A stretch of DNA of 64,000 bases, from positions 124,001 through 188,000 of IMG/VR virus record IMGVR_UViG_3300036770_007495; one strand, 5' to 3'. Shown here one piece after another: positions 4,824 through 56,360 of the stretch. A program made the translations under genes and the position numbers. The notes below the pieces were generated by a model. It worked only from the letters and a program-made list of their open reading frames with translations. It ran no database searches and was not told where the DNA came from. Within the stretch, counting starts at the first letter, position 1; every line of letters begins with the position of its first letter.

Positions 4824-5306
4824 ATGTCTGTCAACGGAAAAAAACCAACAACAAAATTTAGCAAAGAGCAATTTTATGTAGATCCAGATGTGCTCAAACA
4901 ACAAATTACTGAGTTTTACCAAACAGAAGTTTGTACTACAGCACTTGGTGAAAGCATCAACAAAATTGCTCAGGGGCTAAGTTTCTCACCCAGCTTCATC
5001 AATTACACTTATCGTGATGAAATGATTGGTGATGCCATTGTAAAAATGTATAGTGCACTCAAGCACAAAAAGTACAATGTAAACACAGAAACAAATCCCT
5101 TCTCATACTTTACCACCATTGCATTCCATGCTTTCATCAATCGCATCAAGAAAGAAAAAAAGCATCATGAAGCTGTTGAGCAGTATCGTGCAAATGAATA
5201 CGAGAAGCTTCTGACTGCTGGAGAAATACATGACGAAAAATATCACATCTACACCAAACCCAACTGCGATGATTCAGACGACCAGCAAGATAGCGATCTT
5301 CAGTGA
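4824..5306 (+). CDS. 55: Late-transcription sigma factor gp55
   Basis: FINYTYRDEMIGDA and NPFSYFTTIAFHAFINRIKKEKK motifs; directly upstream of gp47/gp46. Confidence 0.93.
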   Translation: MSVNGKKPTTKFSKEQFYVDPDVLKQQITEFYQTEVCTTALGESINKIAQGLSFSPSFINYTYRDEMIGDAIVKMYSALKHKKYNVNTETNPFSYFTTIAFHAFINRIKKEKKHHEAVEQYRANEYEKLLTAGEIHDEKYHIYTKPNCDDSDDQQDSDLQ

Positions 5307-15584: not shown

Positions 15585-16286
15585 ATGTGTGCCATTTTTG
15601 GATCATTTGACCGCAGCATGTACGATGTTTTGTTTGAATCAAACAATGCAAGAGGCAATTTTGCTTACAGTCATTGTTTTCTCAACTCAAAAAGTGCTGC
15701 ACCTTTTCACATCAAAAAGTTCAATAAAATTCCAAAAATCAATGATATTACAGATGTGAGTTCAAATGTGTATCATTTTGGTCATTTTCAAGCACCCACC
15801 AGTTCAGTAAGAACATGGAAAGAAGAAACAAGTCACCCATTTGAGCATGGTGATTGGATTGTTGCTCACAATGGCGTTCTCACCAACTTTAAAGAGCTTG
15901 CTGATGAATATGCGCCCATGCTCAACATCAAAGTTGATAGTGCAATCATTCCAATGATGCTTGCAAATCATACATTTGAAATTGATGCCAAGCAAAAAGA
16001 TGCAGCAATGATTGAAAATGCTGTAAAAACTGTTTTGGAAAAACTCAAAGGCACATTTGCATTGTGGATCATCAATCGCAAGCACAAACGAGCTTTTGTT
16101 GCGCGTCAAGGCAGCACTCTTTTTGCAAATGCTAGCACCGGGAGCTTTTGTTCTGTTGAATGCAAAAGTGAAGGGTGGAGTGAACTATCAGAAGGTTACA
16201 TCTACGAAGTGCTCTTCAAAGCAAAGTGCCTTGCTCCATTTGCTAAGTTTAGCATTGACTCTCCATTCTTGTTTATTCAAGAGTAA
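15585..16286 (+). CDS. Stand-alone class II (Ntn) glutamine amidotransferase
   Basis: Starts M-C-A-I-F-G (catalytic Cys1); RG, GHFQAPT, HPF, VAHNG.LTN..EL, VDS, LKGTFA, AR motifs. Confidence 0.88.
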   Translation: MCAIFGSFDRSMYDVLFESNNARGNFAYSHCFLNSKSAAPFHIKKFNKIPKINDITDVSSNVYHFGHFQAPTSSVRTWKEETSHPFEHGDWIVAHNGVLTNFKELADEYAPMLNIKVDSAIIPMMLANHTFEIDAKQKDAAMIENAVKTVLEKLKGTFALWIINRKHKRAFVARQGSTLFANASTGSFCSVECKSEGWSELSEGYIYEVLFKAKCLAPFAKFSIDSPFLFIQE

Positions 16287-16629
16287 GGAGATATCTGAGA
16301 TGATTCATTGCTCCAATCATCTCATCTCTAATGTTGAGCAAATCAGAATGAGATTGAATGTCTTCAACTTCATTGGTGAGCATTGAAATTGCATTGGTGA
16401 GAATCTTTTCAAGGTCAGTGGTTTCATCCAAATTTCTCAAATCCAGGCTCTGTGCAAATGCAACGCGGCCATAAATGCCCTGATAAGTTTCAACAAATGT
16501 ATCCAACAAATCGCCCAAAGAATCATAGAATTTGCCAAAAGCTTTGTGACGAGCATATGATTTGGTTTGCCAATGATAAATTCTAATCTGAAGTTGCAGA
16601 TAAATGAGCTGAGCAATAATTCTTGACAT
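16273..16629 (-). CDS. Ferritin/Dps-like four-helix protein (DUF5856-like)
   Basis: IYHWQTKSYARHKA..FY..L..LLDTFVE.YQG.YGR ... NIRDEM...YLLTL; TAAATA 5 nt before ATG 16629. Confidence 0.8.
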   Translation of the reverse strand: MSRIIAQLIYLQLQIRIYHWQTKSYARHKAFGKFYDSLGDLLDTFVETYQGIYGRVAFAQSLDLRNLDETTDLEKILTNAISMLTNEVEDIQSHSDLLNIRDEMIGAMNHLRYLLTLE

Positions 16630-16639
16630 ACATGTATTT

Positions 16640-16954
16640 ATGAGCGAAATAAGAAAATTTGAAACTGGTGCACACAGAAATGATGATGCTAACAAACCCA
16701 AAATGTCATTGATTCCGCATGCTGAATTGATGCGAGTGCTTGCACGATATCGAGCAGGTGCTGATAAATTTGGAGCACACAATTGGAAAAATGGCATGCA
16801 ATTGTCTGAATTGTATGATAGTGCTCAGCGACATTTGACCAGCTGGTACATGAAAGATCAGAGTGAGGATCATGCTGCAGCTGCAGTTTGGAATATTCTT
16901 TGTGCCATGTGGATGGAACAAAACAAACCTCAAATGGATGACAGAATTTTATGA
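16640..16954 (+). CDS. DUF5664-like (dATP/dGTP diphosphohydrolase N-terminal domain) protein
   Basis: FETGA.R....KP..SLIP, GA.K.G..NW..G, SA.RHL..W, EDH.AA..WN. Confidence 0.8.
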   Translation: MSEIRKFETGAHRNDDANKPKMSLIPHAELMRVLARYRAGADKFGAHNWKNGMQLSELYDSAQRHLTSWYMKDQSEDHAAAAVWNILCAMWMEQNKPQMDDRIL

Positions 16955-52606: not shown

Positions 52607-53323
52607 ATGATCACATTTGATGAAGCAAATCACAAGTATTACAATGAGTTTGGCACTGAATACATTAGTGTAACAACTTTTTTGAATACATTAAAGAAGC
52701 CTTTTGATACTGAAAAGCACGCTGCACGTGTTGCTGAAAAGAACAATACTACACCTGATGCAATCAAAGCAACATGGAAAGCATTGACTGTTGAAGCTCA
52801 AGAAAAGGGCAAGGCTTTTCACAAAGCCATGGAAGATTACATCAAATATGGAGAGATTGATGCTCAATATTCAGATCTCATCAAAAGTCTCAACAAGGCC
52901 AGTGAAGGCTTCAAGGCCAACAAGAAGACAGCAGAAGGTTTGCTGTGGAATGATGAATCACAAATTGCAGGAACAGCGGATTTGGTGTTGGAAAATGATG
53001 ATGATTTCTTCATCTTGGACTTCAAAACCAACAAAAAGTTCACTTTTATGAATGCTTTTGGTGAAAAATTACTTGCACCTCTCGACTTCTTAGATTATTG
53101 TGAGTTTACAATTTACTCTTTGCAATTGTCCTTGTATGCTTACATGAAGCAAAAGCTCACTGGAAAGCACTGCAAGGGGTTGAAAGTGCTTTACTTGACT
53201 GTAAATACATTCAACAACACAAGATATTGGAGAGAAATTCCCATCATCTATTGCAAAGACACCATTGAAAAACTAATACAACATCGCAAAGCATCTCTAT
53301 CTACACAGCATGCAAATACATGA
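52607..53323 (+). CDS. PD-(D/E)XK exonuclease
   Basis: H.Y...SVTT, G..FH..ME, AGTADL, DFKT, Y.LQLS.YA. Confidence 0.88.
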   Translation: MITFDEANHKYYNEFGTEYISVTTFLNTLKKPFDTEKHAARVAEKNNTTPDAIKATWKALTVEAQEKGKAFHKAMEDYIKYGEIDAQYSDLIKSLNKASEGFKANKKTAEGLLWNDESQIAGTADLVLENDDDFFILDFKTNKKFTFMNAFGEKLLAPLDFLDYCEFTIYSLQLSLYAYMKQKLTGKHCKGLKVLYLTVNTFNNTRYWREIPIIYCKDTIEKLIQHRKASLSTQHANT

Positions 53324-53723
53324 TACTGCAAATAGTCGGTTCTCCAAATCCAAAGTTGAAGAGTTTTGGAGAATGGTTGAAGGGGTAAAATGGGAAGAAG
53401 GCCGTAGTGCTGAAACCATTAAATTGGATCTGATGAAAATCATGACTCCCTCTTGTGCTGAAACCAACAAGCGCATTGCTTATTTCTATGCTCTGCATTT
53501 GGTTGATGCTTTCAAAAAGTGGCAGCATACAGCAGGTGATGAAGAGAAGTATGACATGATTGATCTTGAATTTGCTGCAAGCAATGCAGTTGGTGGTGGT
53601 AAATTCAATTATGATCAGTTTGTTGCTGCACCGCAGTATCTTGCAGCAGAAGCTAATAATGTGTCTATTGAAGACAACTTCATGAAATGCTTGCCAACTG
53701 ATGATGATTACTACTATCAATAA
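53310..53723 (+). CDS. Hypothetical protein
   Basis: 137-aa ORF ending before the bidirectional terminator. Confidence 0.65.
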   Translation: MQIHDTANSRFSKSKVEEFWRMVEGVKWEEGRSAETIKLDLMKIMTPSCAETNKRIAYFYALHLVDAFKKWQHTAGDEEKYDMIDLEFAASNAVGGGKFNYDQFVAAPQYLAAEANNVSIEDNFMKCLPTDDDYYYQ

Positions 53724-53743: not shown

Positions 53744-53777
53744 AAAAAAAAAGAGCGGCATTTCTGCCGCTCTTTTT
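53744..53777. terminator. Bidirectional intrinsic terminator
   Basis: A-run + GAGCGGCA-TTTC-TGCCGCTC + T-run between convergent genes (GAAA loop on the - strand). Confidence 0.92.
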
Positions 53778-53800: not shown

Positions 53801-54607
53801 TCAGTCAAAGATTGATTTGCCAGGAGTGAGCTTGCTGTTGACTTTCATGCTGCCTTTGCTCATGAGAGTCTTGCCCTTGTCACCAAGTGCCTTTGGTTCT
53901 GCTTCAAGATCAACGTTAACAGAGGCATCAGCCTTGCCGCCAGTCTTGCCTGTTACAGTACCGCCCACTTTCATCTTGCCCTTGCCCATGAGATCATGGC
54001 CTTTGTTGCCAATTGGCTTTGGAGAAGGCTCAACTACAACGCTTTCTGGAAATGCTCCTTCATCTTCGTCTTCATCATCCATCATCTCATCACCGAGATC
54101 AGCGCCAAGATCTTCTGCGCCCAATTCTTCATCGGTCATTTCATCTTCCATGCCGCCTTCAAGCTGGCCCATGAGTGCATCATGAAGCTTCTGTGCAAGT
54201 TCACGTGGAAGAGAAATTGTGATTTCTGTTTCATCACCCATGTCATCAGAAACATCAACATCAAGAGCTTCAAGGTCTTGGTTTTCAGTATCCATGTCAG
54301 ATGGGTTGTCCATCACTTCTTCGTAGAGAGTATCAAAAAGAGATTTTTGTGTCATACCGGTATTTAGGGCCACTGCCTGTGCTTTTTCAACTCCTAAAGA
54401 AAATTTTTGAGGCTCAAACAAATTATTTTTCTTGCCCTTCTTGGAGTCCAGTGCTGGTACAAAGCCTGAAGCATTGGCAGGGCCACCTTTTTTGTCCATG
54501 TCCATGATTTCAGCGCCCATGGTTGGCTTTTTAATTTTCATTGTTGGCAGTGGCTTGCCGCCTTTGCCGCCTTTGAGTTTGATTTTGACTGTAGATTTGC
54601 GTTGCAT
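53801..54607 (-). CDS. Late low-complexity protein (basic N-terminus, acidic core, two C-terminal repeats); possible prohead core/internal protein with an internal isoform from 54355
   Basis: TAAATA 5 nt before ATG 54607 and again 5 nt before in-frame ATG 54355. Confidence 0.75.
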   Translation of the reverse strand: MQRKSTVKIKLKGGKGGKPLPTMKIKKPTMGAEIMDMDKKGGPANASGFVPALDSKKGKKNNLFEPQKFSLGVEKAQAVALNTGMTQKSLFDTLYEEVMDNPSDMDTENQDLEALDVDVSDDMGDETEITISLPRELAQKLHDALMGQLEGGMEDEMTDEELGAEDLGADLGDEMMDDEDEDEGAFPESVVVEPSPKPIGNKGHDLMGKGKMKVGGTVTGKTGGKADASVNVDLEAEPKALGDKGKTLMSKGSMKVNSKLTPGKSIFD

Positions 54608-54612
54608 AGCAT

Positions 54613-54633
54613 TATTTAGGGCTGCAATAAATA
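54613..54633. promoter_or_regulatory. Back-to-back divergent late promoters
   Basis: TATTTA 54613-54618 (-) and TAAATA 54628-54633 (+). Confidence 0.75.
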
Positions 54634-54641
54634 AAAGCACT

Positions 54642-56360
54642 ATGGCAAATAAAAAAGGTGACTATTATCTCAACAATCCTGCGCTGCCTACCAGCAGGGC
54701 AGAGTTTGAGTATACACCAGAAATGTTGAAGGACATCAAAAAATGCGAGCAGAACTTGCTATTTTTTGCTGAAAACTATTTTTACATCATTGATCCAGAT
54801 GAGGGCAGAACCATCATCAAGCTCTACAAGTATCAAAAAGATGCTTTGAGAATGCTGCGAGACAACAGATACAATTTGTTGCTTGCAAGTCGACAAATTG
54901 GTAAAACCACATTGCTGACCATTTATGCACTGTGGATTGCATGTTTCAATGAAGATCAAAACATCATGATTGTGGCTAACAAAGAGAGCACAGCCATTGA
55001 AATCTTCCGAAGAGTGCGTCTAGCATATGAGCAATTGCCCAACTGGCTCAAGCCTGGTGTTGATGAATATGGCAAGACTAGTATGACGCTCAACAATGGT
55101 TCCAGAATTGGTATTTCCACAACAACAGGCAGTGCTGCTCGTGGTACTTCCTTGAATGTATTGATTCTTGATGAGTTGGCTTTCATTGATCCACCTTCCA
55201 TCATGGAAGATTTCTGGCGTTCTGTGTGGCCTACCATTTCTCGCTCTAAAAAATCCAAAGTTCTCATTGCATCCACTCCCAAAGGCACAGACAACTTGTT
55301 TTATCAATTGTATGATGGCTCAGTAAAAGGTGAAAATGGCTTTGCCAGCATGACCATCAAATGGGATGCTGTGCCAGGGCGTGATGAAAAGTGGAAAAAA
55401 GAACAAATCAAGCAAATTGGCAGCGTTGAATCATTCCTCCAAGAATATGAATGTGAATTTTTGCAGAGCGGTGAATCTTCCATTGACGTAGAAACATTTG
55501 AACGCCTCAAGCAAAATTGTTCCATTGCACCCTATTCTTTGGATGATGGCAAGTATATGATTTGGCAGCAGCCCAAAGCAGATAGATTATACATTGTGGG
55601 TGTTGACGTTGCTGAAGGTGTGGGTCAGAACTATTCTGTTGCACAAATTCTCGACATAACTGATTTGACCAACATTGAACAAGTTGCTGTGTATCGAGAC
55701 AATGTAATTGCACCTGCTCAATTCACAACAAAACTGTTTGAGATATTGCAGCAGTGGGGTAATCCATTGGTGCTCATTGAAAGAAACAATTGCGGTGCTC
55801 AAGTTGTTGACAATTTGCGCAACATTCATCAGTATGAGAACATTGTGAGCTATGGTGCTGAACTAGCAGGTCGCAAAAAAGACTTTTTGGGTGTTGTTGC
55901 TCATACCAACACCAAGCAGCGAGGTGTTCTCAACATGAGATATTGGGTGAATGTGCTCAATTGTGTTCGTTTCAATCACATGCAGACCATCATCGAGCTC
56001 AAAGACTTTGTGCGCAAAGCCAATGGCACATGGAGTGCACGAGGCAATGGCACAGATGACTGCGTCATGAGCCTCATTTGGGCACTTGTTGTTTTGGACA
56101 ATGATCCACAGTTTGGCATTTGCAGCCAATATTTTGAAGTTGTTGACTTGGATGAAAACAGCAAACCAAGAAGCATCAAGCCCATGGATTATGGCCTCAA
56201 ATATTTTACAGCCAACAACAAAAAATTTGATATGTTTGGCAACATGCTAGAGGCATCTAAATATGAAGATGCAGCTACTTTGCCAATTCTGTTTGGTTCT
56301 GCTGGTCAACAAAATGAAGATTTAGCTGACTTAGAATTGCAAGGCTGGAAAATTTTATGA
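54642..56360 (+). CDS. 17: Terminase large subunit gp17
   Basis: YL.NP.L, LY.YQ, SRQIGKTT, ANK, LP.WL, LDE.AFI, ASTP.G, QEYEC.F, GVDVAEG, DD.VM. Confidence 0.96.
   Translation: MANKKGDYYLNNPALPTSRAEFEYTPEMLKDIKKCEQNLLFFAENYFYIIDPDEGRTIIKLYKYQKDALRMLRDNRYNLLLASRQIGKTTLLTIYALWIACFNEDQNIMIVANKESTAIEIFRRVRLAYEQLPNWLKPGVDEYGKTSMTLNNGSRIGISTTTGSAARGTSLNVLILDELAFIDPPSIMEDFWRSVWPTISRSKKSKVLIASTPKGTDNLFYQLYDGSVKGENGFASMTIKWDAVPGRDEKWKKEQIKQIGSVESFLQEYECEFLQSGESSIDVETFERLKQNCSIAPYSLDDGKYMIWQQPKADRLYIVGVDVAEGVGQNYSVAQILDITDLTNIEQVAVYRDNVIAPAQFTTKLFEILQQWGNPLVLIERNNCGAQVVDNLRNIHQYENIVSYGAELAGRKKDFLGVVAHTNTKQRGVLNMRYWVNVLNCVRFNHMQTIIELKDFVRKANGTWSARGNGTDDCVMSLIWALVVLDNDPQFGICSQYFEVVDLDENSKPRSIKPMDYGLKYFTANNKKFDMFGNMLEASKYEDAATLPILFGSAGQQNEDLADLELQGWKIL

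What the first reader, a model, noticed from the sequence alone, without database searches (positions are those of the whole stretch)
53801..54618. One gene, two late promoters: nested in-frame isoforms
TAAATA-N5-ATG occurs at 54607 and again inside the coding sequence (codons L-N-T-G-M) at 54355. The long form (268 aa) adds an 84-aa Lys/Gly-rich basic arm. The short form (184 aa) begins with a capsid-leader-like MTQKSLFDTLYEE, has a very acidic core, and ends in two repeats (EPSPKPIGNKGHDLMGKGKMKV / EAEPKALGDKGKTLMSKGSMKV). The gene is divergent from terminase. Inference: a scaffold/core protein made in two charge variants.
Basis: partly seen in the sequence, partly recalled or inferred. Interest (0 to 1): 0.6.

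Follow-up and report, generated by a model that had tools for sequence, protein, structure and literature searches.

The report
Two-promoter phage gene, nested isoforms
A late gene beside the terminase of an uncultured T4-like phage has a second late promoter written into its own codons, so it most likely makes both a full-length and a shortened protein; the arrangement is kept letter for letter across a large phage clade.

Summary
The gene at 53801-54607 (- strand, 268 aa) has TAAATA-N5-ATG at its start and again in frame at M85.

The window lies in a 224.7-kb T4-like myovirus that encodes a gp55-type late sigma factor. In this genome TAAATA-N5/6-ATG marks about 60 gene starts. With T4 late-promoter geometry (-13 to -6), the A of ATG falls at +1. 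Position -1 is never A (34 of 39 sites a pyrimidine). Late mRNAs therefore look leaderless.

The internal site is present in 58 of 59 related loci (31-96% protein identity). It is invariant at synonymous positions. Leu becomes Ile only through CTA to ATA, which keeps the motif. Some lineages carry only the short gene, starting at this Met. The N-arm is under purifying selection but varies in length and is sometimes absent. A conserved terminator follows the stop, so the internal promoter can only express codons 85-268.

Function is open. The protein is mostly disordered and has no known family. The short form begins with a roughly 12-aa leader ending in the only conserved L-x-E site, like a T4 capsid-targeting leader. 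That reading is inferred. No RNA or protein data could be obtained.

The parts
53801..54607 (-). Long-form CDS, 268 aa plus stop (P0001)
   Evidence: Full-length homologues. The N-arm has dN/dS of about 0.05-0.4 in most of 13 pairs (one 0.68).
54613..54618 (-). Upstream TAAATA (late-promoter -10 element) for the long form, 5 nt before ATG 54607
   Evidence: Homologues have TAAATA N4-N13 before an ATG or GTG start.
54361..54366 (-). Internal TAAATA embedded in codons L81-N82-T83, 5 nt before ATG of M85
   Evidence: Invariant in 45 unique homologous genes as xTA-AAT-Axx.
54353..54355 (-). ATG of M85, proposed +1 and start codon of the short form
   Evidence: M85 is invariant. The base at -1 is a pyrimidine in 45/45 homologues. 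Short-only genes start here.
53801..54355 (-). Short-form CDS, 184 aa plus stop
   Evidence: Natural short-only homologues L152-L154.
54356..54607 (-). N-terminal basic arm, residues 1-84 (pI 10.3), present only in the long form
   Evidence: Conserved motifs. Length varies from 74 to about 300 aa, or the arm is absent, in relatives.
54320..54355 (-). Leader of the short form, residues 85-96, ending in L94-Y95-E96 (candidate prohead-protease site)
   Evidence: This is the only L/I-x-E site conserved in the family, in 49 of 50 sequences. F91 and E96 are invariant. M-to-E distance is 10-13 aa in most family members.
54032..54319 (-). Acidic core, residues 97-192 (36 D+E, 2 K+R), containing the conserved strand-helix segment 128-151
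   Evidence: AF2 helix at 135-151. R135, A138 and L141 are invariant.
53966..54031 (-). C-terminal basic repeat 1, residues 193-214
53840..53905 (-). C-terminal basic repeat 2, residues 235-256, 13/22 identical to repeat 1
53748..53777 (.). Bidirectional intrinsic terminator (13-bp stem, T-runs on both strands) ending both transcripts
   Evidence: A hairpin plus T-run follows the stop in at least 37 of 45 homologues, with different stem sequences.
54628..54633 (+). TAAATA of the divergent large-terminase gene (ATG 54642, N8), back to back with the long-form promoter

Best explanation
The gene is a stand-alone late transcription unit of a T4-like phage with two gp55-type late promoters and one terminator.

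- **Long form.** The upstream TAAATA starts an mRNA at or next to ATG 54607, which gives the 268-aa protein.
- **Short form.** A second TAAATA is written into codons 81-83. It starts an mRNA whose first base is the A of the M85 codon. This leaderless mRNA is translated into the 184-aa short form.
- **What differs.** The two proteins share the acidic core and the basic C-terminal repeats. They differ only by the 84-aa basic arm. Their ratio would be set by the two promoters.

The shared element is shown by sequence comparison. The transcription start, the leaderless translation and the existence of both proteins are inferred.

For function, my best guess (about 0.35) is a disordered head-internal or assembly protein. 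In the short form the leader of about 12 aa is at the free N-terminus. It would act like a T4 capsid-targeting sequence and be removed by the prohead protease after L94-Y95-E96. In the long form the same peptide is buried behind the basic arm.
For: 1. **Phage type.** The record is a complete 224.7-kb virus with T4-type terminase, portal, prohead protease and capsid genes. It also has a gp55-like late sigma factor at window 4824-5306.
2. **Gene-start motif.** TAAATA-N5/6-ATG marks about 60 gene starts. The logo over 39 sites is [C/A]A-TAAATA-N4-Y-ATG, with -1 never A. The T4 late consensus lies at -13 to -6, and phage Aeh1 uses CTAAATA from -12 (PMC1524935). This puts +1 on the A of ATG.
3. **Conservation of the internal site.** It is present with exact N5 in 58 of 59 IMG/VR loci at 31-96% protein identity. 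The 59th keeps TAAATA with a 15-nt insertion.
4. **Selection acts on the nucleotides.**
   - In 45 unique genes the codons are ATA or CTA, then AAT, then Axx, then NNY, then ATG.
   - Only 5 of 205 codon columns have an invariant third base. Three of them are these (xTA, AAT, ATG), one is the start codon and one is a Lys column.
   - Elsewhere in the same genes ATA is 22.5% of Ile codons, CTA 15% of Leu and AAT 65% of Asn, and pairwise dS is 0.5-3.
   - The Leu-to-Ile replacement keeps TAAATA.
   - A rough probability over 11 clusters sharing under 60% identity is about 2e-9.
5. **Short-only genes exist.** In L152-L154 the gene starts at this Met behind TAAATA-N5, with a stop 5 codons upstream and only 84 nt to the terminase start.
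6. **The N-arm is translated.** Its dN/dS is below 1.
7. **The internal promoter has only one possible product.** A terminator directly follows the stop and is conserved. The next gene is convergent.
8. **T4 precedents.** In-frame products from internal starts are annotated for T4 genes 17 and 21 (PMC9026906).
9. **Leader hypothesis.**
   - L94-x-E96 is the only conserved L/I-x-E site.
   - The capsid and protease N-termini of this phage carry L-x-E sites at T4-like positions.
   - A 93-aa protein encoded after the capsid gene has a similar leader.
Against: - **No direct data.** There is no RNA or protein evidence.
- **One exception.** A 5x-coverage contig (L151) has TAAACA at the internal site together with a stop codon in the N-arm.
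- **GTG starts.** Some relatives start the long form with GTG behind TAAATA-N4/5. This would be unusual for leaderless translation in E. coli-like hosts.
- **Variable spacing.** Spacing at other genes ranges from N4 to N13, so the motif does not always fix +1 on the start codon.
- **Clamp not found.** A search with T4 gp45 found no homologue.
- **Function is weakly grounded.** There are no hits in Pfam, PHROGs, PDB or cultured phages. There is no similarity to T4 gp16, gp22, gp67 or gp68. The AF2 model is low-confidence (pLDDT 54). The gene lies next to the terminase, not in the head module.
Confidence: 0.7

Rival explanations
1. TAAATA-N5 is a Shine-Dalgarno-independent translation-initiation signal rather than a promoter, or as well as one. 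The short form would then arise by internal initiation on the full-length mRNA. There would still be two isoforms but only one transcript.
For: There is no room for a Shine-Dalgarno sequence before any of these starts. Contiguous late genes each carry the motif, which would also suit translation of polycistronic RNA. T4 gene 21 makes its short form by internal translation initiation (PMC9026906).
Against: The motif equals the T4-family late -10 element, and the phage encodes the matching sigma factor (PMC1524935). The pyrimidine at -1 followed by A fits a transcription start. I know of no translation signal that needs six invariant bases at a fixed distance.
Confidence: 0.15
2. The conserved L/I-N-x-x-M is a protein-level motif, for example a processing or binding site. 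The TAAATA-ATG match is a by-product, and only the long protein is made.
For: N82 and M85 are invariant residues next to a conserved peptide.
Against: Codon choice is fixed: ATA or CTA only, AAT only, AGA for Arg. Other invariant residues vary synonymously. Leu and Ile are exchanged only through codons that keep TAAATA. Residue 83 varies (T/N/R/K) but always starts with A. Short-only genes begin at this Met.
Confidence: 0.03
3. Only the short protein matters. The N-arm is a dispensable, lineage-specific extension, and the upstream promoter merely adds expression.
For: Short-only lineages exist. One contig has a stop codon in the arm. The arm varies from 74 to about 300 aa.
Against: Arm dN/dS is below 1 in all 13 pairs tested. 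The motifs G-P-x-N and K-F-S-x-x-x-E-K are conserved across the 50-sequence alignment. The arm frame is open in all but one locus where it is present.
Confidence: 0.1
4. A rival reading of the function only: the protein is the missing small terminase or another DNA-packaging partner of the large terminase, not a head-internal protein.
For: The gene is adjacent to and divergent from the large terminase in every locus with enough flank (56 of 59). No T4 gp16-type small terminase was found in the genome. It has basic arms and a strand-helix segment (128-151) that resembles half a ribbon-helix-helix; this last point is my reading of the sequence.
Against: There is no similarity to T4 gp16 or PF11053. 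The model is mostly disordered, with no long oligomerisation helices. The net charge is strongly acidic.
Confidence: 0.15

Closest known systems
T4 gene 17 (gp17', gp17'') and gene 21 (gp21s): in-frame shorter products from internal starts
   Same: A late morphogenesis or packaging gene gives nested in-frame proteins that share a C-terminus. For gene 17 the T4 record states internal transcription plus in-frame translation. gp21s starts at Met45 and is reported as essential for head assembly (PMC9026906).
   Different: Here the internal promoter abuts the start codon, so the mRNA would have no leader and no ribosome-binding site. The promoter is coded within three sense codons and is conserved across a deep clade. 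The proteins are unrelated to gp17 and gp21.
T4-family late promoters (TATAAATA; CTAAATA in Aeromonas phage Aeh1), read by gp55
   Same: The same core, TAAATA. A gp55 homologue is present. The motif sits in front of structural genes (PMC1524935).
   Different: The first two T4 positions are not kept; the consensus here is [C/A]A. In about 60 genes the element sits at a fixed 5-6 nt from ATG, which implies leaderless or 1-nt-leader mRNAs. I found no description of this for T4-like phages in the paper library.
T4 internal proteins IPI-III with their capsid-targeting sequence, and core proteins cut at L/I-X-E
   Same: A short N-terminal leader (10 aa in IPIII; 10-13 aa here) ends in L/I-x-E. The phage has a gp21-type protease (PMC9026906).
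   Different: There is no sequence homology. The mature part is acidic and disordered rather than a small folded basic protein. Packaging and cleavage are untested. The gene lies by the terminase.
Other nested phage genes (lambda C/Nu3, lambda S105/S107, phiX174 A/A*), recalled from general knowledge and not tested here
   Same: Two in-frame products come from one ORF, with different roles or ratios.
   Different: In those cases the short product comes from internal translation starts on one mRNA, not from a promoter embedded in the codons.

Membership tests
T4-type (gp55-dependent) late promoter | A -10-type element TATAAATA/TAAATA at -13..-6, with no -35 element | tested here: met
   TAAATA is exact at both sites. 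The genome logo shows no upstream element. Geometry is taken from PMC1524935.
T4-type (gp55-dependent) late promoter | The phage encodes a gp55-like late sigma factor | tested here: met
   Window 4824-5306: T4 gp55 match at E 5e-9 and phrog_234 'late sigma transcription factor' at 1e-25.
T4-type (gp55-dependent) late promoter | Sliding clamp gp45 and co-activator gp33 are present | tested here: inconclusive
   A T4 gp45 query found nothing, but a divergent clamp could be missed. gp33 was not searched.
T4-type (gp55-dependent) late promoter | Transcription starts about 6 nt downstream, late in infection | not testable with these tools
The phage is uncultured.
Leaderless mRNA | The 5' end lies at the A of the start codon | not testable with these tools
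   Only the geometry is available: TAAATA-N5-ATG, with a pyrimidine at -1 in 34 of 39 genome sites and 45 of 45 homologues.
Leaderless mRNA | No Shine-Dalgarno sequence or leader is possible | tested here: met
   Only 5 nt separate the promoter element from ATG.
Nested in-frame isoforms from an internal start | An in-frame internal start codon with its own expression signal, conserved in relatives | tested here: met
   Short-only genes.
Nested in-frame isoforms from an internal start | Two protein products detected | not testable with these tools
   No proteomic data were available.
T4 prohead scaffold/core proteins gp22, gp67, gp68 | Sequence or profile similarity | tested here: not met
   hhalign probability is below 1% for all three.
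T4 prohead scaffold/core proteins gp22, gp67, gp68 | Encoded in the portal-protease-capsid module | tested here: not met
   The head module is at genome 79-86 kb and has its own 293-aa ORF between protease and capsid gene. This gene is at genome position 177.8-178.6 kb.
T4 capsid-targeted internal proteins (CTS type) | An N-terminal leader of about 10 aa ending in L/I-x-E | tested here: met
   For the short form only: 12 aa ending in L-Y-E, conserved in 49 of 50 sequences.
T4 capsid-targeted internal proteins (CTS type) | Packaged in the head and cleaved by the prohead protease | not testable with these tools
   The complex prediction with the protease gave no answer.
Small terminase (T4 gp16, PF11053) | Family match | tested here: not met
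   PF11053 was not found in the genome. hhalign against T4 gp16 gave probability 0.4%.
Small terminase (T4 gp16, PF11053) | Adjacent to the large terminase | tested here: met
   Adjacent in every locus with enough flank, but divergent rather than co-directional.
Small terminase (T4 gp16, PF11053) | Folded helical oligomerisation domain | tested here: inconclusive
   The AF2 model shows only three short helices, with pLDDT 54.

The most novel reading that the evidence does not exclude
This uncultured clade of large T4-like phages runs its late programme on leaderless mRNAs: the gp55-type -10 element sits a fixed 5 nt from the start codon of most late genes. The clade has used this compact signal to plant a promoter-plus-start inside a coding sequence. 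One gene then yields a protein with a free N-terminal capsid-targeting leader, which is packaged and cleaved, and an arm-bearing form in which that leader is masked. The second form would be kept outside the head or act with the neighbouring terminase. Promoter choice would in this way decide where the protein goes.
Probability: 0.25. Interest if true: 0.75.

Novelty: new variant of a known kind. Interest (0 to 1): 0.55.

Why it matters
Nested isoforms are known in phages. Here the signal for the second isoform is a complete promoter-plus-start unit of 14 nt hidden in sense codons, and it can be recognised from sequence alone.

- **Annotation.** Gene callers miss such internal products. They also mis-place starts in this clade: the window's own database entry uses a GTG 11 codons upstream, and another ORF is called 56 codons too long.
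- **A clean example of selection.** The site shows selection on synonymous positions and on the choice among similar amino acids (Leu/Ile restricted to xTA codons).
- **A simple expression system.** If the leaderless reading is right, this clade is a natural system in which gp55-type transcription and 70S-type leaderless translation are coupled at nearly every late gene. That would be a new expression strategy for T4-like phages and a very simple design for a synthetic late-expression cassette.
- **A protein worth testing.** The protein is a widespread family with no known function (over 400 clusters at 50% identity) and is always paired with the large terminase. It is worth testing for a role in head assembly or packaging.

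Tried and rejected
- **Function by homology.** All of the following were empty: Pfam and PHROGs on the protein and on 50 family members; a PDB profile search; tblastn of the protein and of two divergent relatives against 50,697 cultured-phage records; DNA search against phages. The ESM Atlas feature search gave only unnamed viral clusters scoring below 0.9.
- **Profile comparison.** hhalign against T4 gp22, gp16, gp68 and gp67 gave probabilities below 1%.
- **Structure.** AlphaFold2 with a 50-sequence alignment gave pLDDT 54 and a mostly disordered model. No fold search was run because it would be meaningless.
- **Complex prediction.** Complex prediction of the prohead protease with residues 85-130 gave no answer, score 0.00 (after two busy refusals). 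This is evidence neither for nor against binding.
- **Neighbourhoods of annotated relatives.** phiM9 and Cr30 show no counterpart next to their terminases.
- **A second nested gene.** Window 16273-16797 (-) is not one. Its family match begins at the TAAATA-linked Met, so the upstream 56 codons are probably not coding.
- **Upstream promoter element.** An invariant AAA Lys codon lies 30 nt upstream of M85, but the genome logo shows nothing at that position.
- **Shine-Dalgarno survey.** A crude survey of genes without TAAATA was too noisy to use.
- **Literature.** A search for leaderless late mRNAs in T4-like phages found nothing relevant.

Full report
**1. What the window is**

The window is bases 124001-188000 of a 224,703-bp IMG/VR virus record with terminal repeats, estimated complete. 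The record encodes:
- a T4-type large terminase (54642-56360 +), tail tube and tail sheath;
- a T4-type portal, prohead protease and major capsid protein at genome 79-86 kb;
- a gp55-like late sigma factor at window 4824-5306 (T4 gp55 match at E 5e-9; phrog_234 at 1e-25).

The terminase is at most 38% identical to any cultured phage. The nearest are Pseudoalteromonas, Sinorhizobium phiM9, Caulobacter Cr30 and cyanophages. No DNA match exists in the phage collection. This is an uncultured, distant T4-like myovirus.

**2. The observation**

- On the - strand, TAAATA (54618-54613) is followed after 5 nt by ATG 54607. This opens a 268-aa frame ending at 53801.
- A second TAAATA (54366-54361) is formed by codons CTA AAT ACC. 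It is followed after 5 nt by the in-frame ATG of M85 (54355).
- Residues 1-84 are basic (pI 10.3). Residues 97-192 are very acidic (36 D+E against 2 K+R).
- Two basic C-terminal repeats (193-214 and 235-256) are 13/22 identical.
- The terminase gene is divergent, and its own TAAATA lies 9 bp from the long-form one.
- A 13-bp-stem bidirectional terminator (53748-53777) follows the stop. The next gene is convergent.

**3. What TAAATA-N5-ATG is in this genome**

- The genome has 132 TAAATA. Of these, 42 have ATG exactly 5 nt downstream and 18 have it 6 nt downstream.
- 63 TAAATA-N4-7-ATG sites open ORFs of at least 40 aa, almost always at the first ATG after a stop.
- The logo of 39 N5 sites is [C/A]A-TAAATA-N4-Y-ATG. 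There is no upstream element, and -1 is never A (C 20, T 14, G 5).
- The T4 late consensus TATAAATA lies at -13 to -6 from the start site, and phage Aeh1 uses CTAAATA from -12 (PMC1524935).
- With that geometry, N5 puts +1 on the A of ATG. Pyrimidine at -1 with purine at +1 is the usual start-site preference of bacterial RNA polymerase (general knowledge).
- There is no room for a Shine-Dalgarno sequence.

I infer that most late genes of this phage are transcribed as leaderless mRNAs, or with a 1-3-nt leader. This is not shown.

**4. Is the internal site more than chance?**

In one genome it is not clearly so. I estimate about one chance N5-ATG among the TAAATA sites that are not at gene starts. 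The decisive evidence is comparative.

- **Size of the family.** The word-indexed search found 42 homologues. The exhaustive profile search found 418 representative clusters at E up to 1e-3. A scan of IMG/VR gave 59 loci with DNA, at 31-96% protein identity.
- **Presence of the motif.** 58 of the 59 loci carry an in-frame TAAATA-N5-ATG at the aligned position. The 59th (L060) keeps TAAATA but has 15 extra nt before the ATG.
- **Codon pattern.** In 45 unique complete genes the codons are ATA (36) or CTA (9), then AAT (45), then Axx (45; N/T/R/K, with Arg only as AGA), then NNY (T 41, C 4), then ATG (45).
- **Third positions.** Only 5 of 205 well-occupied codon columns have an invariant third base. 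These are the start codon, one Lys column, and xTA, AAT and ATG.
- **Background codon usage.** Elsewhere in the same genes ATA is 22.5% of Ile codons, CTA 15% of Leu and AAT 65% of Asn. Other invariant residues vary freely at synonymous sites. Pairwise dS is 0.5-3.
- **Leu to Ile.** The amino acid changes but the hexamer does not.
- **Rough probability.** Treating 11 clusters with under 60% identity as independent draws gives about 2e-9.
- **Protein-level survey.** Of 159 family proteins with a recognisable core, 135 have [L/I]-N-[residue with an A-initial codon]-x-M. Most of the rest are shifted by one codon.

Selection acts on the nucleotides.

**5. Are both forms real?**

*Long form.*
- The arm has dN/dS of about 0.05-0.4 in most of 13 pairs.
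- It carries conserved motifs.
- It is preceded by TAAATA at N4-N13 with an ATG or GTG start.

*Short form.*
- Besides the conserved promoter-plus-start, nature supplies the experiment. In L152-L154 (5 contigs from several samples) the gene is 207 aa.
- There it begins at this Met behind TAAATA-N5, has an in-frame TGA 5 codons upstream, and lies 84 nt from the terminase start.

*Variation in the arm.*
- In other lineages the arm is expanded to about 300 aa (P0077 and P0153).
- One 5x-coverage contig (L151) has an in-frame TAA in the arm and TAAACA at the internal site. It is the only exception seen.

*Only one possible product.*
- A hairpin plus T-run terminator follows the stop in at least 37 of 45 homologues, with differing stem sequences.
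- The internal promoter can therefore only express codons 85-268.

**6. What the protein is**

There are no hits in Pfam, PHROGs, PDB or cultured phages. There is no profile similarity to T4 gp16, gp22, gp67 or gp68. AlphaFold2 with 50 sequences gives pLDDT 54, with helices only at 90-100, 105-114 and 135-151. The protein is largely disordered.

Two facts constrain its function.

(a) *Link to the terminase.* The gene is adjacent to and divergent from the large terminase in every locus with enough flank (56 of 59).

(b) *A leader at the start of the short form.* The most conserved peptide starts at M85 (F91 and E96 invariant).
- It ends in L94-Y95-E96, the only L/I-x-E site conserved in the family (49 of 50 sequences).
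- The M-to-E distance is 10-13 aa in most members.
- The T4 prohead protease cuts after L/I-X-E. The 10-aa capsid-targeting sequence of IPIII has its processing determinants at residues 8 and 10 (PMC9026906).
- This phage has a gp21-type protease. Its capsid protein and protease carry L-x-E at T4-like positions.
- A conserved 93-aa protein encoded just after the capsid gene has a variable N-terminal leader of the same style, ending in L-x-E before a conserved mature part.

From this I propose that the short form exposes a capsid-targeting-type leader at its N-terminus, while the long form masks it. Confidence is about 0.35.

A packaging role, such as a small-terminase substitute, remains possible at about 0.15. 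No gp16-type gene was found. A complex prediction of protease with residues 85-130 gave no answer.

**7. Comparison with known systems**

- In-frame nested products from internal starts are annotated for T4 gene 17 ('internal transcription and in-frame translation') and gene 21 (PMC9026906).
- The difference here is that the promoter is fused to the start codon and coded within three sense codons. The short mRNA would therefore be leaderless. The arrangement is preserved across a deep clade.
- I found no paper describing leaderless late mRNAs in T4-like phages.
- I rate this as a new variant of a known kind.

**8. Limits**

The start-site position rests on T4 geometry. GTG starts in some relatives and variable spacing at other genes show that the motif does not always define a leaderless AUG. 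Function is inferred from short motifs and synteny only.

Noticed in passing
whole genome G000; in the window e.g. 19003, 26581, 37440, 39895, 45740, 46718, 50855, 56966, 59676, 61545: About 60 genes start with [C/A]A-TAAATA-N5/6-ATG, with -1 never A and no Shine-Dalgarno sequence. By T4 late-promoter geometry the start codon is at +1, so the late programme looks leaderless. Contiguous tail genes each carry their own copy.
   Followed up: partly
window 4824-5306 (+): A gp55-like late sigma factor (phrog_234 at 1e-25; 39% identity to T4 gp55 over 78 aa). A search with T4 gp45 found no clamp.
   Followed up: partly
L152:1501-2124, also L153 and L154: Natural short-only versions of the gene (207 aa) start at the Met that is internal here. 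They have TAAATA-N5, a stop 5 codons upstream, and lie 84 nt from the divergent terminase.
   Followed up: yes
L151:651-1610: A 5x-coverage contig has an in-frame TAA in the N-arm and TAAACA instead of TAAATA at the internal site. It is the only exception to the rule. It may be a defective variant or an assembly error.
   Followed up: partly
L005:206-2965 (-), likewise L006; L018, L022 and L037 by HSP offset only: The large terminase of several relatives is a single 919-aa ORF with an in-frame insertion of about 350 aa that carries LAGLIDADG homing-endonuclease domains. This looks like an intein after about residue 75-90 of the terminase. The window's own terminase (572 aa) lacks it.
   Followed up: partly
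genome 85461-85742 (+) = L061:2756-3037, outside the window: A 93-aa protein encoded just after the capsid gene is very widespread (168 IMG/VR hits). It has a variable N-terminal leader (M-x-F-D-x-L...L-x-E) before a conserved mature part, and looks like a cleavable capsid-targeted small protein.
   Followed up: partly
window 16273-16797 (-): The 174-aa ORF is probably called too long. The PHROG 858 match begins at residue 56, at the Met behind TAAATA-N5 (16629), which gives a 118-aa protein.
   Followed up: partly
genome 59068, 64889, 71680 (outside the window): TAAATA-N5-ATG gene starts directly abut sequences that look like tRNA 3' ends (GGTTCGA...CCA). The promoter's -13/-12 'CA' would then overlap the end of the tRNA. 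I did not run a tRNA finder on these.
   Followed up: no
window 53748-53777: A 13-bp-stem hairpin with T-runs on both strands acts as a bidirectional terminator between the convergent genes 53310-53723 (+) and 53801-54607 (-).
   Followed up: yes
window 53801-54640 (-): The database copy of this protein (P0002, 279 aa) uses the GTG at 54640, which overlaps the terminase start region. Homologues and the promoter motif point to ATG 54607 (268 aa).
   Followed up: yes
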